A program made the position numbers and the translations under genes. A stretch of 64,000 nt of DNA, taken from NCBI GenBank assembly GCA_001179505.1, contig CDMY01000405.1, forward strand, positions 186,001-250,000. The letters run 5' to 3'. Below, one piece after another: positions 15,901 to 49,300 of this stretch. Source of the stretch: Vitrella brassicaformis CCMP3155 (Eukaryota > Protista > Chromerida). The notes beneath the pieces are model-generated. The model was not told the DNA's origin. It did no database searches and saw nothing but the letters and a program-made list of their open reading frames with translations. How positions within the stretch are numbered: the stretch's first letter is position 1; each line of letters begins with the position of its first letter.

Positions 15901-17312
15901 CAGCAGTGGTCGCCCCGGCCGCTTTCGTCCACCCCCACGCCCCGGCCTTTGTGCACGCCACGCCGTTCATCCAGCCGATGCCGTGCGTCGACCCCTCTCT
16001 CGTCCACCCCGCCGATCGCCTCTATGCTGCCTACCAGCAGGCCCCCATGCGCCCAATGCACACGCCGATCCGTCCTCGGGGGCCGGGCTACCACCCCCCA
16101 CCGCTGGACACCTCTCTGCCGCCCCAGAGCCCGTCCACCGACCGGGGATCGTCGGCCTTCACGCCCACACCGACCTCGCCCCACCCAGAGGGGCAGACGT
16201 CCAAGGGATCCAAGGGGCGCAAGATTTTGAACCGGCCCAAGGAGAGCAAGAGAGCGGGTGGGGGCAATGCAAGCGATGGGGCGAGGTCGCCCAAGAGCCC
16301 CGTGCCGCCGTCAGAGAGCACGTCCAACGAGCAGCAGCCGCAGGCGTCGGCTACTGCTGCTGCTGCGGCGGCCGTGGCGAATGAGGAAAAGGGCGGCGCT
16401 GAGAATGGCGTGCATGTGCATCAGCCTGCGGATGAAGGGGCTAAGGGAGCTGACGAGCCACCACGGGTCGACGACAACAAGGGCGCCAAGACGGTCGCTA
16501 CCCCAGCAGCTGCCCCAGCAGCGGAGAGCAAGCAAGCCGGGAAGACTGAAGATGTGCAGAAGAAGAAGGACGCAGCAGGAGCTGCACCGGTGGCCGCCGA
16601 GAGTGAGAAGGACAAGCCCAAGAAGAAGCGGTGGTGCGAGTATGAAGACGATGACGAGGACTTTTTGCCGGCCCACCCTGGCACCTTGCGGAGCTCGTCC
16701 ACCTCAGACATCCCCCCGACCCCCCTCCCCCAGGCCGAGTCACGCCACCGTGACTCCGTCCCAGCACGCTCCACGTCGCAGCCCCTCTCGCCTCTCATCA
16801 AGAATGGGCCGCCCAACAAGAGCCTCGCGCCAAGCGTGCAGCGCCTGTTCGACAACTACCAACAGAACAGCCCCAACGCCAATGCCGCCAGCAGCACCAC
16901 ACCCAACCACCACCCCGCACCAGACGACACACCGCCCGCACCCACATCGACAGAGCAGGCCAAGCGCAAGCCGCCCCCACTCCCGGCCCGTTCCGGGTCG
17001 CCCGATGGCGCCCGGCGGCCCAGCTGGTCGCCATCTTTGCGCAACACCAAGAACGGCACGCAGGCCGACAGCAGCGTGAGCAAAGAGGGAGAGGAGAGTG
17101 GGGATAACGGAGGAGCGAAGCTCAACAGTTCGTTGCCGAATGGCGGGGTGGCGTCTCCCTCGACCGATGCGAGCCCTTCCGGTAGCTCAGAGGGGCTGGG
17201 TGGGGGCGGGAACGGTGGGACTGCTGGTGCGGCGCGTGAGAGGTGTCAGCCTGTGTCTGTGGCCACGAGCGCACCCGCCCCACACATGGTGACTAGTGAG
17301 GTAGAGATTTGA
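12944..17312 (+). CDS. Large low-complexity protein with N-terminal hydrophobic segments, Lys-rich, poly-Q, RGG and Pro-rich regions
   Basis: Exons about 12944-13106, 13260-13353, 13459-13720, 13850-13927, 14013-14596 and 14659-17312. N-terminus ...TAAAPLALRQTGLYFALYDMAG|FEWSAWGHLTWILFVCLVYWTITWVNTVMER is hydrophobic and is followed by about 1200 aa of disordered sequence. The 3' end is uncertain. Confidence 0.65.
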
Positions 17313-33645: not shown

Positions 33646-36511
33646 TCAGTGACCCCCCCTTCCCCCTCTCCAGGCACCAGCCCTCCTACTGCTGGCCGTG
33701 CTATAGTGTCTGTCGCCCACAAGCCGCCTCTCGATGGCTGCAGCGGAGGCTCTCCGTTGCCCCAAACCACCGCTGGCAGCTGCCATGGCGGCTTGCAGCC
33801 TCCTGGTGCTGCCACCGTTGTTCTCGAGGACCACCGGCTCCCCTGAGTGATACATAGACAGACAGACAGACAGACAGCCAGACATCCAGCGAAATGCATG
33901 CGCCCCCCCCCCCCCCCCNNNNNNNNNNNNNNNNNNNNNNNNNNNNNNNNNNNNNNNNNNNNNNNNNNNNNNNNNNNNNNNNNNNNNNNNNNNNNNNNNN
34001 NNNNNNNNNNNNNNNNNNNNNNNNNNNNNNNNNNNNNNNNNNNNNNNNNNNNNNNNNNNNNNNNNNNNNNNNNNNNNNNNNNNNNNNNNNNNNNNNNNNN
34101 NNNNNNNNNNNNNNNNNNNNNNNNNNNNNNNNNNNNNNNNNNNNNNNNNNNNNNNNNNNNNNNNNNNNNNNNNNNNNNNNNNNNNNNNNNNNNNNNNNNN
34201 NNNNNNNNNNNNNNNNNNCCCGACCCACCGACCCACCTGCTGCCTCATACGCCTTTCTCCATCCGTCGGTCCCCGCCTCGCCATGGCACCTGACGGCAGC
34301 GGCCTTAATCGTCGTGTGGCAGCTGGTCACCTCCTCGCCAGACGGATACAGAGACGACACCAGGGCGTTGCTGGGGTGGCTGCGGTCGCTGCACTCCGCA
34401 AGGGACTCCTCGCTGCCGTCACAGTCGGGGATAGAGAAGATGGAGAGTCCCAGTGACGGCTCGCGGTAGGCCGTGACTTGGGACCTGTTGGCTACCTCAT
34501 AGCCGAGGTGCCGGCAGACCACCTGGGCCTCGCGGAGGGTGAAGCGGTGGTCACTGGGGAGAGAAAAGAAAAAAAGAGAATACAACAAGGAGGGAGGAGG
34601 GCGATGGATGGCGGGCTGTAAACGCAGCAGTGGCATGTGTGTGTGTGTGTGTGTATGTGTCTCCCTGGCTGCAGGCACTGCACTGCACTCACCCGCATAC
34701 GATGCCCCACTTGCCATCTCGATAGATTACAACTCGCCCCTCGTCCATCCCGCCCCTTCCCAGATCCAGCCGCACCTCGCCCTCGACTGACACACACACA
34801 CACACACACACAGAGACACACGCACGTACATCAGGAGCATCTGCCTCTTTCTTTTCTCACCTGGCTCCGGCGCACACTGTGGCGCGTACGAGAAGTTGCC
34901 GTTGGCCTGGCACACACGGACAGCTGGTGGTGGCGGCCATGGCAGCAGGGGCGCGGAGCAGGCCTCGTCGTACAAAAGCTGTGTGTCAACAGGGTATGAC
35001 GTGTTGCCGTGTTGGCACACACACGGCTGGCAGGAGCCGCCGCAATCGCTGTTTTGCTCGTCTCCGTTCATCAGACCATCACTGCACGAAACTGAGAACA
35101 GAAAGGCACAGCAGACAGAGACGGAGAAATGTGTGTATTGCTTGGCTGGCCGGCAACAGATCCCGGTCGGGGTCACTTACCGTTAGTGTCGAATGCTACC
35201 GGTGGCGACGTGAGCCTGCTGATAGTCTGCAGCAGGTGCTGCTTCCACGCGAACAGGTGCTCAAGCCGCTCCCAGCGCCGTCGCCTCTCCTCAGCAGATA
35301 TGGACTCAATCTCCTCCTCGTCTCGCACCGACCAGTCCCACCCCAATCCCACCACCCAGCCCTCCCCTCTCCTCACGGCATACGACGCAGAATGCCCATC
35401 GCACTCATACAGTGACAGTGAGTCATCGGGCAGACTCGACGAGAGCACCGTCGACGTGACAGGCCGGTTGAGGAGCGCCTCAGGCGATTGTGCGAAGCGG
35501 GAATTGTTCCTGGCGGCCTCGGTGAAGTTAAATATGTCGCAGTAGATAAGGGCGATGGAGTTGTCGGACTTGGAGGTGATTGTCCAGTTGAAGACGGTGT
35601 TGGGGACGGTGTGCATGTCGCTCTGCAGTATCAGAACACCACCGCTCTCGACGAAGGACCGAATGGCCGCTCTATCGTCGCTGCCGAGAGCCTTGGCCAA
35701 GGCGCCGACTGAGCGGGGAGTGGGCTGGCGGAAAACACACAACATGAAAGATGGCGTGTGGAGGGCTGTGGCTTCCCCGGTGTGTGTGTGCAATGGGCCT
35801 ACCAGGGCAAGGAAGGATGTGCCTTTTAGCGCCTTCGGCATGCCGTTTTCGCGGAAGTTGTACAGCAGGGTCAGCGACTCCTGCAGCGCCTCCTTCAGTT
35901 CCTCTCGCAGGCTGCCACCCGACCCATCACCCTCAACGAGGTCCCTATCGAAAAGGAGCGTCCCGTGTGTCTCCTGGCCCAGCAGCTGCGGCGCGCCAAC
36001 AAGCTCGGCCTTGCTGCGTCCCACGCTGCCCCTCAGCGCACCGCCCCTCACGCTGCTCCACGCCCCCTCCTCGACCCCCGCGGCAGGCAGCAGCTCGGTC
36101 CGCAAAGCCGAGGTGTCCGACGCCTCGCACCGCACCCACAGGTCCTTCGGCTGCCCACCGCAGTCGACCACGTCGCTGCCTTCCACGCCATACCTCTCGA
36201 GGCTCCCGCACTCGAGCAGGTTCTGTTCGTGGCCCTTGCAGCGGAGGTGGTGCAGCCAGATGATGGCTGGGGGCGTGTCGGGGAGGGATTTGTGTGGCTT
36301 GGTGAGGATGTGCATGGCCTTGCCTGCACCGAGCTGGCGGCAGATGACGTCGGCGTCGAAGAAGGAGAACTCGACGGGGCAGATGGTGCCCCATGAGCCT
36401 CTGCCATAAAACTCCACTCTGCCACTCGCCTGGTCGCTGCCGTCAACAAGCCGCACATCGCCCACATCTGCAGAAGGAGAGACGAGACGGAGATGAGGCA
36501 GTCCGTCGATG

Positions 36512-36545
<34 letters not shown>

Positions 36546-39500
36546 GTTTTGCTGCCCACCGCACCCGGCTCTTTGATGCACTGAAATGTCGTTGGGTCCT
36601 CGTAGAACCCGTCAGGACAGACGCAAATGGCCATGACAGCCCCAAGACGATTCTCACAACTGGCCATTTCGTCACAGACGCCAGGGAGAGCGCACTCGTC
36701 GATGTCCACACAAACGCCGTCCTCCGCGTACTCACTGCCAGGGAAGCAGAGGCACTCGCCGTATCCCTCGCCGACCTCCGATGCAAGACACACGGGGCAC
36801 TCCTGCGGGCCGTCTTCCGCGTCAGTGGGCGGGGGGCTGTCCGCACAGGGATCGGTGTCGGCGCATGCGATGTTAAGCCAGAAGTAGGACGTGGTTTCAA
36901 GGGCGGAGCTGTTGGTCTGCATCCATATGCCGCTGTGGGGGATGTTGCCGACGGAACGGACAAAGGCAAACACGTCGGGGGCGCTCGGGTCGCTGCCGTT
37001 TACAAAGAGCCTGAAGTGAATGAACCCAACACAACAGGCGATGGTGCAGGCAGGCATGGCCCGCCCCGACAAGTGTCTGTGTCTGTGGCTCCTCAATCTG
37101 CCTGCCTTCTCTCACCATGATTCGTGTCTCGCGACAAACACTAGTGTGGCGTTGTTGCGATGGAAGGTCGGCCACGACTGAGAGACGTCCTCTGCCTTCC
37201 ACATGCCGTTGGCCGCTTCATGTGGCTCGGGAAAGCCATAGATGGAGAGGTACTTGCACACCTCACACGACCCTCTCACCAGCTGCACCTCGTCGATGGC
37301 CACGGGCAGGAACTGCTTGGATCCTACAGATGCCCCATTGCGCGTTGCCTCAAAGGTGATGTTGAAGGCACTAGAAGCGGAGAATCGCGTCATGGCGAGC
37401 TGCCAACTATCGCCATGGTCCAAACCCCCCACCGCCCACAGCTCCCTCGACACCCCGTCTTCAGTCTTGGTCACGGTCAAGCTGCCCACAGCACTGCCGA
37501 ACAGGTGGTAGGCGAACTGCAGGCAATACTTGGTCAGTGGCGATGAGGGGATCTCCGGCGGCGACGTGATACGCGTGGAGCCCTCCATCCCACTACTCCA
37601 TGCCCACAGGTACGATGGCGAAAAGTAGCCGGCGCGCGGCAGGGAGGTGACATCTGTTAGCAGGTCCTGTGGACCGGTCGACCAGGCTTCTGTGTCGCTG
37701 AGGTCGTTCCTGTAGCCGCACATGGCGCCTTCAAACGAGCATGACACTTCCGGACACCCCCCGTCCCATATCATGATGTCGTCCAAAGCCAGCCCGCCCC
37801 CCCGCTCCTTGAGATAGACATGGCCCTCAATGACGACGCGGAAATCCACATCTGAGCTGAAGAACAGCCTGGCAACGTGCCAGGTCCGCCTTCGCTTCTT
37901 CAAATGGGCGCTAGTCCAGCGCGCAATGGTGCGAGAGGTGGCGAGGGAGGTGTAGTTGCCCGTTGACGCCGGGACCACATAGATAGCCAGGCGGTCGGCA
38001 GGAGACGTCGACTCAGGGGCGGTCAACTGGTAATGGACTTGCAAGCAGAACCCCTGCACACCACAAAAGACATCCATGGGGGGGGGGNNNNNNNNNNNNN
38101 NNNNNNNNNNNNNNNNNNNNNNNNNNNNNNNNNNNNNNNNNNNNNNNNNNNNNNNNNNNNNNNNNNNNNNNNNNNNNNNNNNNNNNNNNNNNNNNNNNNN
38201 NNNNNNNNNNNNNNNNNNNNNNNNNNNNNNNNNNNNNNNNNNNNNNNNNNNNNNNNNNNNNNNNNNNNNNNNNNNNNNNNNNNNNNNNNNNNNNNNNNNN
38301 NNNNNNNNNNNNNNNNNNNNNNNNNNNNNNNNNNNNNNNNNNNNNNNNNNNNNNNNNNNNNNNNNNNNNNNNNNNNNNNNNNNNNNNGGGGGGGGGAGGG
38401 AGGGATCCGTGCGATAGGGGGCTCTCTCGCGTGTGTGTACCTTACCTTGTTGTCGTCCGATCCTGAGTGAATAGGCGAGATCAGCCGCCCAAGGCCCTCT
38501 TCCCGCCCGTCGACAACGCCAAAAGGGCCAACATAGAGGAACGCATAGAGCACCCCGGACGAAGACATGGTGTGGTCGCCGGTCAAGGCCTCGCCCCCGT
38601 CTGCCGTGCGCAGCTTGCCGGCCGCCACCTCCAGACTCCAGTCAAGCGTGTCGTTTTCTGAGTCCTGCTCCCAGCCGCAGAACCCATTCTCAAAGTCACA
38701 GGCGATGTCCTCGCTGGTGGGGATGTAGCTCTCACACGTGATGCGCACGTTGGTCAGAGTGCTGTTGAGCCGCTCCCCGCCCGACACGAGCACCCAGTCG
38801 CTGTCGATGGGCGGGAGGGAGAGCATGGGGCTGTCGACGCCGAGCGTCTCGGCAATCACCACGGGCTCGCTGGTGCCTCCTGCCGTGTAGGCAACTTTCC
38901 AGCTGTCCGACAAGGTCGACCAGAAGACGAAGAGAGGGCCGTTGCTGAAGGTGCTCTTGCCGTTCTGGAAGCCAGAGCGGAGCCAAAAGGTGCTGGCCGA
39001 TCGGAGGACGGGGTTGGTGGAATCCTGCAGACGGCCATGGCTTCTCAGGAACGGACAGGGGGCGCACTGGCCGGCCTTGACAGCGATGTCGTCGATAGCA
39101 ATGAAGAGGTCCGTCGGAGCGTCGGGGGCCGCTGGCTCGCCAGTGTGGGACACCCAGAAGCCAATCTAGGGAGACAGGCAGGCAGGCAGGCAGGCAGGCA
39201 CAAGCCACACAAGTATCCACACACGGCACCTGGTGAGCCCTTTGTGCTTGGCTGGCTGACCTGGAATGCCTGATCCATCTCATTCAGCTCCACCTGCACC
39301 TGCCTCCAGCCGTCGGTCTCGCCTCTCGCCGCCTTGACACGCGTCTCATTGCCCGCGGTCTCGTTAGCTCTCAAAATGGAGACCTCCAGGACATACTGCC
39401 TCTGGACGTGTGTCCACACGAAGAACTCCAGGCATCCCTGGCCGATGGGTGGTGAGGGGGGCGAGTAGACGGGGGGGACGGAGAAGGTGGACGCTTTGAG

Positions 39501-42176
39501 GGACGGACGAGAGAGATCCAACAGGCCATACTGACCTGCGGAGCACGGACGGGGGGGCGGGAGCAACGCAAACCGGGAGGGACGGTGTGTTGCGTGTTGG
39601 GTGCTGTGCTGTGTGTGCCGTCGTCTCACCCTGTCCTGAGCGTTGTGTGCGGTCTTCGGGCGGCCCCGGCCTGCGGCCGTCAAAGAATCGCCTCTCGAGC
39701 TCCCACCTCACCTCGCCGCCAGTGGTGTTGTCTTTGGAGAAGTTGAAGTCGTGGGCGTACCCACACGTATGGCCCTCTTCAAATCCGCAAGAGCCGATCG
39801 CACCACAGAACGTCAGCAGCTCCACCTCTCCCCTCTTCGCCGTGTCGTTGAGAGATGAGGGGACCAATTCCACCGTCTTGTTTGGCAGCATGTTGGTCGC
39901 ATACACAGTCCAGTTGCCCGACCGGGGGCGGGTGTTGTTGAGCTGTGACGGGACGTCAGGGGACAGCAAGGGCGAAACGAAGGTGAGATTCTCCGTGCGG
40001 ATGACCCATCCGGGCAGCGACTGCTCCCACACGATCGACGGTGGGCTGGTGTCGGCGTCACCATCCGCTGTTGCCTTGAGCGCCCACGTGGCCTTGCCGC
40101 GTTGCCTCGCCGGTGACTTTTGCCACTGGTCAGAGAGTGCCGCGGGCCAGAGGGACGAGTTGGAGTAGAGGGACAGCACGTCGCACTCGAGCATCTGCAT
40201 GCCCGCCAGCAGCGCCCTGTGGGCGTTGACCCGACCCGACGTCTTGGTGAAGCTCATCAGGTGGGGCGAGTAGTCGGCAGATGAGACAACGGCAGTCGCC
40301 ACCTGCAGTTATGTATCACACAACAGAACCAACAGGCACACAGTGACCCTGACACACACACACATATGGTCTCCCCCTGGCCCCGTCACCCACTGACCTT
40401 TGTGGCGGTAAGCTCAGGAAGATAATCCCACACTAAGGCCGCGACGCCCGCGACAATCGGCGCACTGATTGACGTACCCGTTGCCATGCGATAGACGTCC
40501 CCGAATGTGCTCAGGATCTCCACCCCGGGAGCGACCAGATCAACCGAGTCTTTCCCAACGTTGGAGAAGCCCGCCATTTCGTCCGACGGCAGGCTGGACC
40601 CGACGCACAGCACGTTGGCCGCCGACCAGCCGCATGGGAAGTCTCTCGAGCCGATGGTGAGCCCGTCGTCAGAGATGCTATCGTTCTCCTCGTTGCTGTT
40701 GCCCGCGGCGGTCACGATGAGGTGGCCGAGGTCCGCCAGGCGGCGGACGATGCGCCTGAGCATGACATTGACGAGGAAGGGCGACTCCCGCCACCCAAAT
40801 GAGGCTGTGGAAATCTTGGCCCCCATCCTCGCGGCGTACTCCCACCCCCGAGCGAACGCATCGTCCCTCCCGTGGCCACGATCGTCAACTGCCTTGATAG
40901 CCATCAGGCGAGCCCCCCACGTGACACCAACCACACCCTGCGGACACCACAGCAGCCACACACACATGTCAGGTGACTGAATCATGACTATGCTTGGTGC
41001 GGTGCATTTCTTTCGCTTGTGTGACCTCGCTGTTGTTGCCGCGGGCTGCCAGCAGTCCGGCAATGTGCGTGCCGTGCTGGTCGATGGCCTGACGGACGGA
41101 AGCACAAACATCAAGAGGAAGAAAGACGCTGGCGTGGCGTATCGTGTTGTGCTGTGCTGTGTTGTGTTCTGCTGTGTTGTGTTGTGTACCATCGGGTCAT
41201 TGTTGTCGTCAACGAAGTTCCAGCCAAACACATCATCAACGTAGCCATTCCCATCATTGTCAATCCCATCACCTGCACCGCACACCGTAGGCTCAGTGAC
41301 CGTGCTTGGCACGGCCATGCCAAGGCCACCAACCCACCCCCTCCCACCTGGGACCTCTCCTGGGTTGACCCAGATGTTCTCCCGGAGGTCAGGGTGGTCG
41401 TAGTTGATGCCGCCGTCGACCACAGCCACAACAATCCCATTGGTCCCCCGGTGGATGGCCCAGGCCTCCTCGAGGCTGACCTTATCCACCCACCACATGC
41501 CACTCTCATTGTACAGCGGGTCGTCAGGCAAAACCGCTGCTGCCCCTCCCCTACCCCGCCGTGGGTATCCCTCCTGCCCATTGGTGGCCAGTCCCCCGCT
41601 CGCCCTGGTCCACCCCAGCTCCCCGCTGGCGAGCTGCTCTTGACTCAGCGGCCCCACGATGCTCTCCAGGTCGATGGGGTCGGTGTCGAGGTCATCATAG
41701 ATGCCGCCCAGCCGACGCCGGCGGGACGGCGTGTCGACGAAGGTGCGGCGGCTCTCGTGGTAAGCGGCGATGTGCGGGTCGGCTTCTAGCCTTGATATGA
41801 CAGACTGAAAGGGACGATAGCATCCTCGTATGTGTTACCACGTGTGTGTGTGTTGGGTGGTCGTTCGGACCTGCGCCGTTTCGTTGGTGTCGTTGTGGAG
41901 GTGAAGGATCTCGATGCCCGTGAGAGGGAGGGACTCGATTATGGCATGGCCGTCCCATTCTGCAGCTACCTCGGCTCTCTTGGCCTCCACATCTGCTGCC
42001 GACAGCCCTTCGTCAAACATGAACATAACACTCACATCGCCATGTGCAGCTGACGTGCCTGAAGCAAGAGATACACACATGAGCTGATCCGCCTGTCTGC
42101 ATGCGCACCGTGTGAGCGTACCATTGTCGCTGAGAAGCAGCAAGGCCACTGCCCACAGAGCCAGTCCAATCAGCAT
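33646..42176 (-). CDS. Giant secreted subtilisin (S8) with 3 MAM, EGF/EGF-Ca, 2 SRCR and unassigned modules
   Basis: Signal peptide MLIGLALWAVALLLLS and a prodomain. Catalytic triad: VAVVDGG (Asp 41415-41417), HGTHIAG (His 41074-41076), GTSISAP (Ser 40470-40472), oxyanion AAGNS. MAM domains: CGFEEGHTCG...IAIDDIAV, CDFENGFCGW...LALDDIMI, CSFEGAMCG...VAIDEVQL. EGF-Ca DIDECALPG. SRCR domains: VRLVDG...GRVEFY...WGTIC and VRLDLG...GRVVIYRDGKWGIVCG. The model spans two N gaps that lie in introns. Confidence 0.88.
33919..34218. other. Assembly gap (300 N)
   Basis: Exactly 300 N after a poly-C run, inside the last intron of the subtilisin gene. Confidence 0.99.
38088..38387. other. Assembly gap (300 N)
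   Basis: Exactly 300 N between poly-G runs, inside an intron of the subtilisin gene. Confidence 0.99.
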
Positions 42177-42670: not shown

Positions 42671-44930
42671 ATGTACGGCCCTCAAGACCCCAACGCTCAC
42701 CCCTTCCTCGCGGCCATCAGCATCCCGGCCAACCTGCAGTTGCAGTTTCCACAACCGCAGGACGCCACACACACAGTGATGCGCGGCGTCCATGCTGCCA
42801 ACAGCTATGACAGCAACGCTGCCGCTGCTGTTGGGGCTTGTGGCAGGCTCCAGCCGGACCCGATGATCTTCCGACCGAGCACTGTGGACACACATACGGA
42901 GGAGGGCAATCACATGTCGCCCCACTTCTGCATCAATGGGAAGAAACGTTCCATCGCCATCGCACAGCTGGACCCACCGATCCCCGCCGAGGAGGCCGCC
43001 AAGGAGGAGGCCAAGCGGCGGGTGGTGATGCCAAAGAAGGAGAGCAACAACAGCAAGGTCCCGGGCCGGGGGCGGGATGCACAGCGGGTCCACGCGACGC
43101 GTTCTAGCGACCAGGGTGGTGTGTGTGTCGGTGATGGGATCGGGATTGGGATTGCCGTGTCGGACGGGAAGGGGAGTGGAGAGGGGGATGAGGATTGGGC
43201 TTTCTGTGGGCTGCAGCCGCACTGTCACGCGGCCGTTGATGTGCCTGAGCTTGAGGCCGACCTGTACACTTCCTCAGTCGACGGAGTCTACTTCCATCAG
43301 AACCAAAGGGTCAGTGAACAATTCCATGCCTCTGCGTGTGTGTCTGAATTTAGTCCAATGCATTGAGTGCAGGAGTGGCGCGCCAAGTACAACCAGGACG
43401 GCCACCGCCGCATGAAGACCTTCTCCGCCCGCAAGTTCGGTTTCCAGGCGGCGAAGGACCTGGCCGAGGCCTTCGCACACGAGCACCGCGTACCCACACG
43501 CACCAAGCCGCCAAGGGCAGCCACCGTCGCCCCCAGGAAGCAGCCACCGCCCCATGCGCCACACCGGCGATCAGAGAGTGTGAAGAGTGTGAAGGTGTCC
43601 GCCAGGTCGGTCCCTCCCCGGGAGCGTGAGGCCCGTCTGAGGGAGGCGAAGGGCTTTCTGGCGGACTGGGGAGTGGATCCTCACGTATGCGACGCACGGC
43701 TGGTGAGACACGAGACAGAAGAAGGAAACAGAGACGCGGCCCGTCACGTGTGTGCGGCTTTTGGTTGTGGGGTTCCATCCCGTGCAGGCGTCGGGTTTGT
43801 TCCGCCGTCGTGTCGGTGTGGGTAACATCGGGCAGTCGTTTGGCGAGAAGACACTACTGCGGTTCGACGTGAGTGAGCACTCATAAACTCTACAGACAGA
43901 CGCTCATTCTTCAGCACATACCTAACGAGGGATGTGGATGTTTGTGTGGCGTGATGGATCGATCAGACTGAGCTAACTTTCCTGGATGACTTAGAGGACG
44001 TGGTGCGTGCCAGTGAGGAGCAGCAGCTGCACCCGGCCACCACCGAGCCGCTCTGGGACGAAGAACCCGCCTCACACAATGGCATGCAACTGCACACAGA
44101 CACAGACACTTAATTAATCCACCCACAGGCGTTCATTCGCCATGTCTCTCCCTCCTCTGTGTGTGTGTGTGTGTGTGTCTGCAGGGGTGTCGCCCTCCTC
44201 AGAGGAGCATGGGCATGATGACGGCGTCTCCTCCACCAAGATCTCCACCAAGACCCACCAGACGTCGCTGCCCATGGCACCTGAGCCATCCAAGCCACAG
44301 ATTGTCTCATCCTCACCATTCGCGCCGCCGCAAGACTTCTTCGGCCTCCCTCACACCAACTACCGTCAGCAGCACCACCAGCAGCAGCGGCAGGAGCAGC
44401 AGGAGCAGAAGGGCCGTGTGGGCAAGAGCAAAGGCAAAGGCAAGGGCAAGAAGCGGGCGACGCAGAAGAAGTCGAAAAAGGGCGGAGGGGCTGACGAGGA
44501 TGTGCATATGGAGGATGTGGGAACCCACACGAGTGTGCTGCCGCCCCCTCTGCCCCCTCTGCTCGCGCTGCCGGAGAGGCGGGAGGAGACGGGAGCACGG
44601 AAGCCGAACGACACGGCTGTGGGGCTGAATCCTCCCCTGTCCGTCTCTCTCTCTCTCGGTATGGCTGACCCCTTCGCTGCCTTCGCGTCGGCTGCTCTTT
44701 GCCAGGAGCCCCCAAAACACCACCACCACCACCAGCAAGACACCTCAGTTGCCCCACATCAGCCCCTGGTGCAGATGCAGATGGTGTCGTCTTCCTCCTC
44801 TCACTCCGGCATGCCGCACGTATACGCGCATCAATATCATCCCTATCACCCGGCCCCCCCCTTGTCGATGTCTCCTGCGGACCCGTTCGCTGCCCTGTCG
44901 CCCTACTTCATCGTCCCCAAGACACGCTGA
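42671..44930 (+). CDS. ApiAP2 transcription factor (single AP2 domain)
   Basis: AP2 domain VDGVYFHQNQR|EWRAKYNQDGHRRMKTFSARKFGFQAAKDLAEAF, split by a 63-nt intron (43310-43372). Downstream exons 43836-43868, from 43967, and 44185-44930 can be joined in frame. Without that splicing the ORF would end at 43825. Confidence 0.8.
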
Positions 44931-46346: not shown

Positions 46347-49300
46347 TCAGCCCCTGAAGCCGATGAGGTAAGGGTTGACGTGCCCCTCCACCTGGAGGGG
46401 CATGTATGGCGCATCCTCGCCGCCGTCATTGTTGCCATTCCTCCCCCCGATCAGGGCGACCAGGTCACGACAGGTGCCATCGCTCGACGATCGGCCGCTG
46501 CTGCTGACGGCGTGGGCCTTGGCCCCCGGCCAAAAGCCCACCTTCATGCCATTGCGTGGGTGTGCGGGGGCAGCAGCAACAGCAGCAGCAGCAGCAGCAG
46601 GAGGAGGAGGGCTGCTCGTCAGGGGAGGGGGGAAGAAGGCATCAGCCCTGTCCCTGTCCATAGCAATGGCCGTGTCGGTCTGCGGCGACGCTTCCGCCTT
46701 GGCGAGAGTGTCGGTGTGGGGGGTGGTGCTCTTGTTGGTGTGTGTGTTGGACCGCGGGATCTCCTCGTCATGTCTCGTGAGCTGGGGGGGCGGAGGCAGA
46801 CACGGGATGGGCAGGAAGGACGTCGGCACCGCCTGGCCTGCCGGCAGCATCTCCCGAATCTTGCTGAGCAGCTGCTGGGGGGTGGGATGGCCGTCCAGGA
46901 GCAGGCGCAGCAGCTGACGCACCAAGTTGAATCGCTGCACGCTCACGCGCGCCAGCTCGTGCTGCAGCTGCATGAGGACCGTCTTGCACTCGACCGCCCG
47001 CTGCCCGCCCCCTGCCAACGTCGGCTTGGTGCTCGCCTTGACCCAATCCCAACACACCGTCCGCAGATATGGCACCACCGACGCGGGCGGGGTCACCGCA
47101 CCAGAGGCACCCACACCAGCACCAGCGGCCGACGCGGCCCTCGACGCCATGCTCTCAGCTGGGGAGGCATCCTTGTTGGCGGCCAATGCCTGGCCGACCA
47201 GGACGCTTGGTGGGGCCGAGGAGGGCGACACGTCACAGTTGACGCTCGAGGGGTTGTTGAGCTGCAGAACGGATGAAGACGGCGGCAGCACCGGCAGCGT
47301 CAGCCGGTTCCCCGAACCCATGTCGACCGTCACTGACGCCCCATCTGTCTTGGGCGCGGTCACCTTGATGCGTGTGCCCTTGCGCCGCATAGACGGCTGC
47401 GGCTGTGGCTGTCCGCCTGGTCCCCTGGTGGGGTGTCGGTGGGCGGGGTGAGGCGACCACGGAGACGACGGCTCCTTCTTAATGATGCGCCGACCGCGAC
47501 GCGACACGCACACTTCGTCATCACCACCACCCGTGTCAGGACCGGCTCCCTTTTTTCCAGGCCCTGTCTTCTTGTCGCTCTCGGGCGTCTTGGGCTTGTC
47601 AGACTTCTTGAAGCGGCCAGTGATGTCGTCCCGCGGCGCGTCCGGCCGGGCGGCCTTCTGGTGAGCAGTGGGGGTGTCAGTGTCCTTGTCGCCATCACGG
47701 TCCCGTTTGATGCCTTTGCTGCGCGTCTTGCCCTCGGTGAGGACCACGTCGCTGTCGAGCAGGGGGTCCTTGTCGACTTTGCGCGGCTTGCCTGGCGCGG
47801 GGGGGAAGATGCCGAGTTTCTTGAACTTTTTGCGGAGCTTCTTGCGTCGCTCGATGGCCTCGTCTGTGTAGGGGTCGCCTTCGATGCGGTTGTGGACGGG
47901 GTTGGCCTCTGCCCACTCGTCGGCGAGCTTCTTGGCCTCGTGGTAACCGTATTTCTGCATTCATTGACACACGGACGGAAGGAACAGCAGAAGAGATGTA
48001 TGGAGTTGGAGGGGCGGCGGTCGGAGGGGCGAGGCTCCTTACGTTGCTGGAGAAGGTCTTCATGCGTCGGTGTCCGTTGTCGATGTAGCGAGCACGCCAC
48101 TCCTGCAGTGGGGACACAACACAAACAACACAAACAACACACACACACAGCGTATCCATCTCAGTCGACATCCCCTTCTCTCTCCATCCTGCTTGCCCCG
48201 CCCAACCCACCCACCTGTTTGCGATCGTGGAAGTACACCTGGCGCATCATCCTTCCCTTGACAGCCCTGCTCCTGTCGGCCCCGCCGCCCCCGCCCCCAC
48301 TCCTCGACCCGTCACGCGACTCCCACTCCTCCTCCGAGTCAGACCCGCCATCCTCCTCACGCACACCACAACCACCATCACCCCCAGCAGCAGCAGCAGC
48401 AGCAGCAGGAGCAGCAGCAGCAGCCCCGTCACACTCGCCCCTGTCCTCCTCCTGGAAGTGCCGCCACATCTCGTCCGGCACCTTCTTGCCCTTCGGCTCC
48501 TTCCGCTTGCCACGCTGCGCTCCTCCCGTCTCGTAGTCCCGAGCCAGTTTGGGGTTCATGCCGGCGGTCGAGCGGGCGGGGCGGCGCCTTGACAGCAGGC
48601 CGCCCATGTCGCCTGTGCTGGCCGGCTGCTGCTCCGGCTGCAGCAGCTGCTGCTGCTGCTGGTCTCGCTGTTCGCACGTGGCGAGTTCGTCGAGCAGCTG
48701 GTCTGCGGCGCCCTGGATGATCTGGAGGGGTGAGGGGAGCGCGGCGTCGGGGGTGGCGGGGCCCATGCTGGCCGGTTCGGCCTGAGGGATCTTGCTGGTG
48801 GATGCCTTTGTGCGGTCGGCAGAGGCCGCCATGAGCTCCAGCTCCTCATCCTTCTTGATGTTCTGGATTGTGTGCGGGGAGAACTCACGACCGCCCTCCA
48901 CGCCACTGCTCTTGGTGCCGTTGGACTGAATGGCCAACCTTCCCCCCTCGCCAGGAATCCGCGCCTTCTGTATGGCGAGTCTTGGTGGTGGCTTCTGCCC
49001 AGGTAGGCGTGACGAAGACCCACGAGCGTCCACCAATGCCGGGGTGCGTGTGGGTGTGGGGGGGACGGACTGCATGGTCGGGACGGGGTGCATGAAGGGG
49101 CCAGCAGTGGGAGGGATGGCCGTCTGCCGACCGAACGCCTCGGTGTGTCTGTGATCTGCCGGCCCAGAATGAGCCACAGCCACCGGGGGGAAAAGGGGGA
49201 AGTATGCCGGAACAGGCGGGATGGCAAACAGGCCGTTGGTGGCCTCGCTGGTGCCGTGTGCCGGTTGAGGAGGGACCCCATGCGGCAGATGGGGATGGCC

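What the first reader, a model, noticed from the sequence alone, without database searches (positions are those of the whole stretch)
33646..42176. Giant mosaic subtilisin: S8-X-MAM-X-MAM-MAM-X-EGF-EGF-SRCR-(alpha/beta)-Cys repeat-SRCR
Seen: a signal peptide, prodomain and intact Asp/His/Ser triad, followed by well over 1000 aa of adhesion and pattern-recognition domains, with no C-terminal TM helix visible. Known: apicomplexan SUB proteases drive egress and invasion, MAM and SRCR domains occur in apicomplexan and animal surface or immune proteins, and in animals such domains usually accompany trypsin or astacin proteases rather than subtilisins. Inferred: an apparently undescribed secreted recognise-and-cleave protease (zoospore release, wall remodelling, or microbial recognition).
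Basis: partly seen in the sequence, partly recalled or inferred. Interest (0 to 1): 0.8.

Follow-up and report, generated by a model that had tools for sequence, protein, structure and literature searches.

The report
Secreted subtilisin with MAM/SRCR tail
This is a real, transcribed 17-exon gene of the alga Vitrella brassicaformis that encodes a 2161-residue secreted subtilisin-type protease followed by a long tail of binding modules; the gene model is already public but unstudied, and the family looks confined to chromerid algae.

Summary
On the minus strand, 42176 to 33646, lies one 17-exon gene. One 6526-nt spliced cDNA contig joins the signal-peptide exon, the S8 protease, three MAM domains, the EGF modules and the first SRCR domain. 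All its introns are GT..AG.

The gap at 38088-38387 lies inside a spliced-out intron, which the contig shows directly. The gap at 33919-34218 lies inside an inferred intron.

My model is identical, residue for residue, to public protein CEM10777.1 / UniProt A0A0G4FC41 (2161 aa, auto-named "subtilisin").

- **Domains:** Pfam confirms S8, MAM x3, EGF_CA and SRCR x2.
- **Catalytic residues:** D211, H266, N362 and S438 are intact.
- **Anchoring:** there is an N-terminal signal-like segment and no transmembrane helix.

Two Vitrella paralogues and Chromera Cvel_4287 are colinear with it. Among the 150 closest S8 relatives in 1.84 billion cluster representatives, only these four carry the tail.

Woo et al. 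2015 list Cvel_4287 and Vbra_15024 as example genes for MAM and SR domains. No searched paper describes the protease fusion.

The scan had already noted a similar gene on another piece of this genome (s1-216021).

Verdict: a new variant of a known kind, a mosaic secreted subtilase. Its function is inferred, not shown.

The parts
42122..42176 (-). Exon 1: start ATG at 42176 and the signal-like hydrophobic N-terminus.
   Evidence: First ATG of the open frame, with no upstream in-frame ATG back to 42593. The 42059-42121 intron is spliced out in X4 and X5. The X4 contig runs upstream past 42249, so there is a 5' UTR.
41871..42058 (-). Exon 2: first part of the prodomain.
   Evidence: RNA joints 42057>42121 and 41804>41871. 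hhalign against fervidolysin-type N-pro domains gives probability 46%, E 2e-4.
41348..41804 (-). Exon 3: end of the prodomain and start of the S8 domain. Catalytic Asp211 is at 41415-41417.
   Evidence: Joints, Pfam, residue mapping.
41190..41272 (-). Exon 4: the DGIDNDGNGYVDD insert between the catalytic Asp and His.
   Evidence: Joints 41269>41345 and 41087>41189. Aligns to Deseasin MCP-01.
41026..41088 (-). Exon 5: catalytic His266 (HGTH) at 41074-41076.
   Evidence: Joints 41087>41189 and 40936>41025, mapping.
40398..40937 (-). Exon 6: S8 core with oxyanion Asn362 (40698-40700) and catalytic Ser438 (40470-40472).
39630..40302 (-). Exon 7: end of S8, linker region X1 (no Pfam match) and start of MAM1.
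   Evidence: Joints 40300>40396 and 39533>39628, Pfam.
39261..39535 (-). Exon 8: MAM1 core.
   Evidence: X5 record 13 piece 39261-39533. MAM match found in the genome search and at 5.3e-17 when scanned alone.
38446..39165 (-). Exon 9: end of MAM1, beta-barrel module X2, first half of MAM2.
   Evidence: X4 and X5 pieces 38445-39163. Intron 39166-39260 follows from the two unplaced letters plus the CT..AC ends.
38054..38445 (-). Intron 9. It contains assembly gap 38088-38387.
   Evidence: Joint 38052>38445 (CT..AC) in cDNA contigs of X4 and X5. DNA contigs of X1 and X6 stop at the gap in G- or GA-rich repeats.
37116..38053 (-). Exon 10: second half of MAM2, all of MAM3, start of X3.
   Evidence: Pfam MAM at 1123-1281.
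36565..37010 (-). Exon 11: beta-barrel module X3 and two EGF-like modules (cEGF-like, then EGF_CA).
   Evidence: Joints 37009>37115 and 36467>36565. Pfam. X3 model has pLDDT 81 and eight strands.
35803..36467 (-). Exon 12: SRCR1 and the first part of the family-specific alpha/beta (AB) domain.
   Evidence: The 5' end is shown by RNA. The 3' end is inferred from an in-frame 78-nt GT..AG intron that matches a 26-residue gap in the paralogue and from identity to P0001.
35181..35724 (-). Exon 13: rest of the AB domain.
   Evidence: Inferred from GT..AG sites and phase and from identity to P0001. The AB profile matches only this locus and C176 in the genome.
34861..35091 (-). Exon 14: Cys-rich module (C.DG..NGDE...DCGGSC..C.C plus a sushi-like half).
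   Evidence: Inferred splice sites. Conserved in P0002 and P0004. No Pfam match.
34693..34786 (-). Exon 15: N-terminal part of SRCR2.
   Evidence: Frame analysis and splice sites. SRCR_2 match at 1982-2019.
34237..34553 (-). Exon 16: C-terminal part of SRCR2.
   Evidence: Pfam SRCR 2e-9. Donor cagGTGGGT at 34236. Identity to P0001.
33843..34236 (-). Intron 16 (inferred). It contains assembly gap 33919-34218.
   Evidence: Phase-1 donor and acceptor. The C176 paralogue has the same phase-1 intron followed by an exon that also begins 'EPV'. Not covered by reads.
33646..33842 (-). Exon 17: non-hydrophobic C-terminal tail and the stop codon at 33646-33648.
   Evidence: The X5 contig runs 1902 nt past 36250, against 1830 nt to the stop in the model.

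Best explanation
This is one nuclear gene of Vitrella brassicaformis that encodes a secreted S8A subtilase made as a zymogen.

Shown:
- It has 17 exons, a spliced transcript and a 2161-residue open frame.
- It has an N-terminal hydrophobic leader and an S8 domain with an intact Asp211/His266/Asn362/Ser438 set.
- After the S8 domain come MAM1, a beta-barrel module (X2), MAM2, MAM3, a second copy of that module (X3), two EGF-like modules, SRCR1, a family-specific alpha/beta domain, a Cys-rich module, SRCR2 and a short non-hydrophobic tail.
- It has no transmembrane helix.
- It belongs to a small chromerid family: three genes in Vitrella and Cvel_4287 in Chromera.

Inferred:
- The leader takes the protein into the secretory path.
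- Residues of about 25-190 act as a folding and inhibitory propeptide that is cut off autocatalytically, as in other subtilases.
- The roughly 1700-residue tail binds the enzyme to an extracellular matrix, wall or foreign surface, or makes it oligomerise as MAM does in meprin. Cleavage is thereby confined to what the tail holds. This is the logic of Deseasin MCP-01, whose C-terminal domain binds collagen, and of enteropeptidase.
- My preferred role, at about 30%, is remodelling or opening of the cyst or sporangium wall at zoospore or autospore release, by analogy with the Chlamydomonas subtilase sporangin.
- Processing of other secreted adhesins, or action on bacteria or coral surfaces, are the alternatives.
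For: Single transcript:
- X5 record 13 is a 6526-nt contig with eleven GT..AG joints from 42144 to 36250.
- Its spliced length to 36250 is 4624 nt, exactly the sum of my exons.
- DNA contigs of the same sample (X1, X6) keep the introns.

Frame and model:
- The frame is continuous over 2161 codons.
- My model is identical to public P0001 = CEM10777.1.

Domains.

Catalytic residues and nearest solved relatives: Deseasin MCP-01 at 4.1e-50 and PfSUB1 at 1.4e-39.

Leader and lack of a transmembrane helix, also in P0002 and P0004.

Family:
- Colinear paralogues lie on C176 and C690, with a colinear homologue in Chromera.
- S8 identity within the family is 55-59% in the alignment. In the 150-hit table, the best non-chromerid hits by score have 38-44% identity and a few short lower-scoring hits reach 50%.
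- Only these four of the 150 carry MAM, SRCR, AB or Cys-rich parts.

Modules: X2 and X3 are homologous (hhalign 89.5%), and X3 folds as an eight-stranded beta barrel (pLDDT 81).
Against: - There is no enzymatic, localisation or expression-stage data, so the biological role is analogy only.
- Exons 12 (its 3' end) to 17 and the second gap were not covered by reads. They rest on splice signals, phase, the paralogue, the contig length and the public model.
- The signal peptide is judged from hydropathy alone, since no predictor was available.
- The prodomain assignment is weak. P0001 has no Pfam match, hhalign gives 46%, and paralogue P0007 scores 20.5 bits against a cut-off of 21 for Fervidolysin_NPro-like.
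- In run X4 the 5' (S8) part lies on low-depth fragments (5-13) and the 3' part on a contig of depth 63. This could be 3' bias, or a shorter transcript that lacks S8. The tool warns that contig depth cannot rank parts of a gene.
Confidence: 0.85

Rival explanations
1. The giant protein is an annotation chimera. Two or more neighbouring genes, a subtilase and a MAM/SRCR adhesin, were read as one across introns and assembly gaps.
For: There are two 300-N gaps inside the span. In X4 the 5' and 3' parts lie on separate contigs of very different depth. Contigs can bridge neighbouring genes.
Against: One X5 contig splices all exons from exon 1 to exon 12 in one open frame with no stop. Gap 1 is inside a spliced intron. 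The same order of modules is kept at 25-59% identity in two paralogues and in Chromera.
Confidence: 0.03
2. The protein is surface-anchored rather than freely secreted. An exon for a transmembrane or GPI signal is hidden in gap 2 (33919-34218), or it is held on the cell through its MAM and SRCR modules.
For: Gap 2 was not covered by reads. MAM and SRCR proteins of animals are often membrane proteins (general knowledge).
Against: Paralogue P0002 (C176, with no gap there) and P0004 end in similar non-hydrophobic tails with no C-terminal transmembrane window. The X5 contig length fits the model without an extra exon.
Confidence: 0.08
3. It is mainly an adhesin or scaffold in which the S8 domain is a non-proteolytic relic or acts only on itself.
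For: About 80% of the residues are binding modules, and there is no activity data.
Against: All four catalytic residues and their motifs are kept in P0001. The motif scan found the His and Ser motifs in P0002 and P0007 and the Asp and His motifs in P0004; its patterns did not pick up the remaining triad motifs there, so conservation of the full triad in those three was not confirmed. The S8 domain is the best conserved part of the family, at 55-59% identity against 24-47% for the other modules.
Confidence: 0.05

Closest known systems
Deseasin MCP-01 (Pseudoalteromonas; PDB 3vv3), a bacterial S8A collagenolytic subtilase
   Same: It is the best solved relative of the catalytic domain (4.1e-50, residues 190-494), including the DGIDNDGNGY insert. 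It is secreted, and C-terminal non-catalytic domains target the substrate (general knowledge).
   Different: Its tail is short (PPC and PKD domains), it is bacterial, and it has no MAM, EGF or SRCR.
Apicomplexan SUB1 and SUB2 (PfSUB1, PDB 4lvn, 4tr2, 8pol)
   Same: The same S8A family, and the second-best solved relatives (1.4e-39). They are secreted-pathway proteases of the sister lineage.
   Different: Probably not orthologous. Woo et al. 2015 place Cvel_19350 (SUB1) and Cvel_24873, Cvel_8734 and Cvel_11794 (SUB2) in those orthogroups, not Cvel_4287. The SUB proteases have no MAM or SRCR tail, and SUB2 has a transmembrane anchor that is absent here.
Enteropeptidase (TMPRSS15) and other animal mosaic serine proteases
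   Same: A serine protease combined with MAM and SRCR modules in one extracellular chain, following the same 'bind, then cleave' logic (general knowledge).
   Different: The animal proteases have a trypsin (S1) fold at the C-terminus and a type II membrane anchor. Here the protease has a subtilisin (S8) fold at the N-terminus and there is no anchor. The similarity is convergent, not homologous, as far as the protease goes.
Meprin (astacin plus MAM)
   Same: A MAM domain sits next to a secreted or extracellular protease. In meprin the MAM domain drives oligomerisation (general knowledge).
   Different: Meprin is a metalloprotease (M12A) with a single MAM domain and no SRCR.
Giant fervidolysin-like multi-S8 proteins from environmental assemblies (P0003, P0006, P0009, P0013, P0019)
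   Same: They are the nearest S8 relatives outside chromerids (38-44% identity). They are mosaics with Ig-like, fn3, PKD or BACON modules. P0003 even carries an InhA-like MAM jelly roll.
   Different: They have two or three S8 domains per chain and clear Fervidolysin_NPro prodomains. They have no PF00629 MAM, SRCR, EGF, AB or Cys-rich modules.
Chlamydomonas sporangin (hatching subtilase)
   Same: A secreted algal S8 enzyme that opens the mother-cell wall (general knowledge). It serves here as the functional analogy.
   Different: No sequence comparison was made here, and it has no MAM or SRCR tail. The analogy is a lead, not a test.

Membership tests
Peptidase S8 (subtilase), subfamily S8A | Match to PF00082 above the curated cut-off | tested here: met
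   163.5 bits against a cut-off of 21.8, residues 203-473.
Peptidase S8 (subtilase), subfamily S8A | Catalytic triad in the order Asp-His-Ser with its motifs, plus the oxyanion Asn | tested here: met
   D211 (VVDGGI), H266 (HGTH), N362 (AAGNS) and S438 (GTSISAP), aligned to Deseasin and PfSUB1.
Peptidase S8 (subtilase), subfamily S8A | N-terminal propeptide (I9 or fervidolysin N-pro type) | tested here: inconclusive
   No Pfam match in residues 1-202. hhalign against N-pro domains gives probability 46%, E 2e-4. Paralogue P0007 scores 20.5 bits against a cut-off of 21.
Peptidase S8 (subtilase), subfamily S8A | Proteolytic activity | not testable with these tools
   Needs the recombinant enzyme.
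MAM domain proteins (PF00629) | MAM domains above the cut-off | tested here: met
   Three stretches, 180.6 bits in total. MAM1 alone scores 62.5 bits and MAM3 alone 97.2 bits.
SRCR domain proteins (PF00530) | SRCR domains above the cut-off | tested here: met
   66.9 bits and 38.1 bits against a cut-off of 26.1. 117 bits on P0001.
Calcium-binding EGF (PF07645) | EGF_CA above the cut-off, with a second EGF module | tested here: inconclusive
   EGF_CA scores 29.7 bits against 27 when residues 1396-1482 are scanned alone. The first module scores only 21.7 bits for cEGF against 26.6.
Apicomplexan SUB1/SUB2 orthologues | Same orthogroup as PfSUB1 or PfSUB2 | tested here: not met
   Indirect. Woo et al. 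2015 file 9 lists other Chromera genes for SUB1 and SUB2, not Cvel_4287, which is the closest Chromera homologue of this protein.
Kexin/furin proprotein convertases (S8B) | P domain directly after the catalytic domain | tested here: not met
   No Pfam family at E <= 1 in residues 474-626.
Enteropeptidase / type II transmembrane serine proteases | Trypsin-fold S1 domain and an N-terminal membrane anchor | tested here: not met
   There is no Trypsin match on P0001. The only hydrophobic segment is a short N-terminal leader.

The most novel reading that the evidence does not exclude
The family is a chromerid-specific 'recognise-and-cleave' system. The SRCR and MAM modules, together with two domain types that have no named family (the alpha/beta AB domain, and the eight-stranded beta-barrel module that follows MAM1 and MAM3), would bind defined ligands on bacteria, coral tissue or the alga's own wall. 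That would deliver a subtilase to the bound target. It would be a protease-armed pattern-recognition protein that arose independently of the animal SRCR and MAM proteases.
Probability: 0.15. Interest if true: 0.65.

Novelty: new variant of a known kind. Interest (0 to 1): 0.4.

Why it matters
Chromerids are the free-living algal sisters of apicomplexan parasites, whose subtilases drive egress and invasion. A conserved chromerid family that joins a subtilase to MAM, EGF and SRCR modules shows that 'animal-type' recognition modules were combined with proteases independently in this lineage. It resembles enteropeptidase in logic but uses a different protease fold.

The family also offers a concrete candidate for wall opening or surface interaction, in organisms where Chromera has recently become transfectable (PMC12407925, listed). 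It holds two conserved modules without a named family.

The value is limited. The gene model is already public, the finding is domain shuffling within known families, and there is no functional evidence.

Tried and rejected
- **AB plus Cys-rich region (A1, three sequences).** The AlphaFold2 model has mean pLDDT 42.9, so I did not use it for fold search. The secondary-structure pattern is alpha/beta, but unreliable.
- **Word search with A1.** No hit at E <= 0.01 among proteins of 179-569 aa. This says nothing about longer proteins.
- **ESM Atlas feature search of the AB domain.** The top rows (MJECL34, DUF2194, unnamed bacterial clusters) share only 129-153 of 256 features, below the level that supports membership. 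I treated this as no assignment.
- **Word search with the MAM block of P0001 (residues 620-1400).** It found only P0001 itself and animal MAM/LDLa proteins. It even missed paralogue P0002, so it is a weak negative.
- **Fold search of X3.** Foldseek against PDB gave nothing at E <= 0.001. VIA-align wide gave a best Z of 6.7, within the noise range stated by the tool. The ESM Atlas by shape gave TM of about 0.7 to unnamed protist proteins.
- **Pfam at E <= 1.** Nothing for X1, X2, X3, AB, the Cys-rich module or the tail.
- **Literature.** Searches by accession, gene id and domain words found no paper on the fusion.
- **'Sushi' label for the Cys-rich module.** Pfam does not support it here.
- **Joined model.** I put the hand-joined spliced model together only inside scripts, from window coordinates. 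I used it to check the frame and to compare it with P0001. I sent it to no search tool. All searches used window references exon by exon, or the public protein id P0001.

Full report
**What is there.** The finding lies on the minus strand of a GC-rich (about 60%), intron-bearing eukaryotic sequence. Stop-free segments read from 42593 down to 33649. They carry, in order, Peptidase_S8 (1.8e-32), MAM (1.8e-7 and 1.1e-27) and SRCR (2.2e-18 and 2e-9). This was confirmed when the encoded protein turned out to be a GenBank entry of V. brassicaformis CCMP3155.

**Gaps and transcript, tested first.** Six public runs hold the stretch. I laid contigs of four of them on window:36250-42249.

- X1 and X6 behave as DNA. 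Their contigs keep the introns and stop at the gap, in G-rich or GA-rich repeats.
- X4 and X5 behave as cDNA. Their contigs skip eleven segments, and each skipped segment is CT..AC on the plus strand, which is GT..AG on the minus strand.
- X5 comes from the same sample as X1 and X6. So the joined form is RNA, not a processed DNA copy.
- X5 record 13 is a single 6526-nt contig running from 42144 through every exon to 36250 and then 1902 nt further.
- The spliced length from 42144 to 36250 in my exon table is 4624 nt. That is exactly the contig position reported for 36250.
- The joint 38052>38445 removes a 392-nt intron that contains the whole gap 38088-38387. So that gap does not touch the coding sequence.
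- With these joints the frame runs without a stop from the ATG at 42176.

**The 3' third.** Only one read-laying run of 6000 letters was allowed, so exons after 36250 rest on other evidence.

- An in-frame 78-nt GT..AG intron (35725-35802) coincides with a 26-residue gap in the alignment to the paralogue.
- Three further introns have good donor and acceptor sites and the phases required by the SRCR2 pieces.
- A last phase-1 intron (33843-34236) contains gap 33919-34218.
- In the C176 paralogue, which has no gap at that place, SRCR2 is also followed by a phase-1 intron and a tail exon that begins 'EPV'.
- The model puts the stop 1830 nt past 36250. The X5 contig goes 1902 nt, which leaves a 72-nt 3' UTR.
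- The resulting 17-exon, 6486-nt coding sequence gives 2161 residues.

I assembled this joined model only inside scripts. I sent it to no search tool.

**It is a public gene model.** An exhaustive HMMER search with the S8-bearing open segment (window:40389-41834:-) returned P0001 (2161 aa, 99% identity) as the top hit. P0001 is identical to my model over all 2161 residues. It is GenBank CEM10777.1 / UniProt A0A0G4FC41_VITBC. GenBank calls it 'unnamed protein product' and UniRef calls it 'subtilisin'. From here on I used P0001 by id.

**Anatomy (P0001 numbering).**

| Residues | Part | Evidence |
|---|---|---|
| 1-24 | Hydrophobic leader | Kyte-Doolittle 1.74, |
| about 25-190 | Probable propeptide | beta-alpha-beta pattern; hhalign to fervidolysin-type N-pro 46%, E 2e-4; paralogue P0007 at 20.5 bits, just under the Pfam cut-off, |
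| 203-473 | S8 domain |; D211, H266, N362, S438, |
| 474-626 | X1 | no Pfam match |
| 634-812 | MAM1 | |
| 813-932 | X2 | see below |
| 933-1120 | MAM2 |; start and end estimated from the alignments |
| 1123-1281 | MAM3 | |
| 1284-1400 | X3 | see below |
| about 1417-1475 | cEGF-like, then EGF_CA | |
| 1487-1593 | SRCR1 | |
| core 1648-1832 | AB region | see below |
| 1883-1958 | Cys-rich module | |
| 1962-2080 | SRCR2 | |
| 2083-2161 | Tail | rich in Arg, Gly and Ala, not hydrophobic |

- X2 and X3 are homologous to each other (hhalign 89.5%, E 2e-6). X3 folds with confidence (pLDDT 81) as an eight-stranded beta barrel. It has no convincing solved relative. It does have shape matches of TM about 0.7 to unnamed proteins of foraminifera, haptophytes and diatoms.
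- The AB region has no Pfam, word-search or reliable structural assignment. In the Vitrella genome it occurs only here and in the C176 paralogue.
- The Cys-rich module keeps an invariant C.DG..NGDE...DCGGSC..C.C motif in the three full-length family members.
- No 19-residue window other than the leader exceeds Kyte-Doolittle 1.63.

**Family.** Genome-wide Pfam scans show S8, MAM and SRCR on the same strand and in the same order at C176, and S8 and MAM at C690. tblastn shows colinearity along the whole length with C176, and as far as the MAM array with C690. The proteins are:

- P0002 = CEL93535.1 (2408 aa), with the same architecture.
- P0007 = CEM30221.1 (1681 aa), with S8, three MAM and part of the EGF region. 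Its locus lies next to a gap.
- P0004 = Chromera velia Cvel_4287 (3484 aa), with S8, MAM, EGF_CA and two SRCR.

Identity to P0001 is 55-59% in S8 and 24-47% in the other modules. In the 150-hit table, the best non-chromerid hits by score have 38-44% identity in S8, and a few short lower-scoring hits reach 50%. Of those 150, drawn from 1.84 billion cluster representatives, only these four contain MAM, X2, X3, SRCR, AB or Cys-rich parts.

The other close relatives that I scanned are giant environmental proteins. They have two or three S8 domains, fervidolysin-type prodomains and Ig-like, fn3, PKD or BACON modules. One of them has an InhA-like MAM jelly roll.

The scan had noted a like gene on another piece of this genome (s1-216021). 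That is presumably the C176 paralogue.

**Prior art.** Woo et al. 2015 (PMC4501334), Supplementary file 5, lists Cvel_4287.t1 and Vbra_15024.t1 as example genes under both MAM and SR, and Vbra_10049.t1 under MAM. The text on extracellular proteins does not mention a protease fusion. The same paper's orthogroup table assigns other Chromera genes to SUB1 and SUB2. Full-text searches by accession, gene id and domain words found no paper on this protein or this architecture. I could not map CEM10777.1 to its Vbra id.

**How it most likely works.**

- Shown: it is transcribed and spliced, it has an intact catalytic apparatus and leader, it has no membrane anchor, and its modular tail is conserved.
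- Inferred from what is known of subtilases: it enters the secretory pathway, the propeptide assists folding, and the propeptide is removed autocatalytically.
- Inferred from what is known of the modules: the tail binds or oligomerises. MAM drives oligomerisation and homophilic binding in meprin and RPTP-mu. SRCR binds protein and microbial ligands. Calcium-binding EGF acts as a spacer.
- Consequence: the protease is held on a matrix or surface and its cleavage is confined there. The nearest solved catalytic domain, Deseasin MCP-01, works this way with a collagen-binding C-terminal domain.
- Biological role: this is open. I prefer wall remodelling or release of daughter cells or zoospores, by analogy with the algal hatching subtilase sporangin, at about 30%.

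**Rivals.** A chimeric gene model is essentially excluded (about 3%). A hidden anchor in gap 2 (about 8%) and a non-proteolytic adhesin (about 5%) are unlikely.

**One loose end.** In X4 the 5' S8 part lies on contigs of depth 5-13, while the 3' part, from about 39430 on, lies on a contig of depth 63 that also runs about 2.4 kb past the stop. This may be 3' bias, or merging with a neighbouring transcript. An internal start is not excluded.

**Verdict.** This is a chromerid-specific new variant of the mosaic secreted subtilases, of moderate interest.

Noticed in passing
window 39398-39450, and 33646 down to about 31265: In run X4 contig depth jumps from about 13 (5' S8 exons, on several short contigs) to 63 near 39430. 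That 6699-nt contig continues about 2.4 kb past the stop codon. This could be 3' bias, a long 3' UTR, overlap with a neighbouring transcript, or an internal start.
   Followed up: partly
window 43367-43822 (+), and 47698-48246 (-): Open segments with an AP2-like motif (EWRAKY..GHRRMKTFS). Pfam AP2 scores 26.8 bits, below the 33.3 cut-off, for the first and finds nothing for the second. They may be ApiAP2-type genes upstream of the protease gene.
   Followed up: partly
window 41148-41187 (intron 4): A stretch of about 30 nt on which many short, high-depth DNA contigs and loose ends pile up in X1 and X6 (bin depth 104 against about 21). It looks like a short dispersed or low-complexity repeat inside the intron.
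   Followed up: no
window 38087/38388 and 33918/34219 (gap edges): Both assembly gaps are flanked by G-runs or GA-rich simple repeats. DNA contigs of X1 and X6 end there with GGAGAGGGAGGG-type loose ends, which probably explains why the assembly broke.
   Followed up: partly
P0001 residues 813-932 and 1284-1400 (window 39063-38704 and 37258-36803): A repeated eight-stranded beta-barrel module with conserved Trp residues and flanking Cys residues. It has no Pfam family. Its only shape matches are unnamed proteins of foraminifera, haptophytes and diatoms, so it may be an unnamed extracellular domain family of marine protists.
   Followed up: partly
G000:C149:148138-148665 (-): This is the best MAM match in the genome (94.6 bits), and it is not next to an S8 domain. 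It may be the MAM plus copper amine oxidase gene that Woo et al. list as Vbra_7021.
   Followed up: no
G000:C690 (L002/L004), gap at 16687-16986: The third family member (P0007, 1681 aa) ends within the EGF region, close to an assembly gap. Its public model may be truncated and may lack SRCR, AB and SRCR exons.
   Followed up: no
P0003 (ENA environmental contig, 3094 aa): A giant protein with three S8 domains, fervidolysin prodomains, fn3, Glucodextran_B and an InhA-like MAM domain. This shows that a subtilase joined to a MAM-superfamily jelly roll also exists outside chromerids.
   Followed up: no
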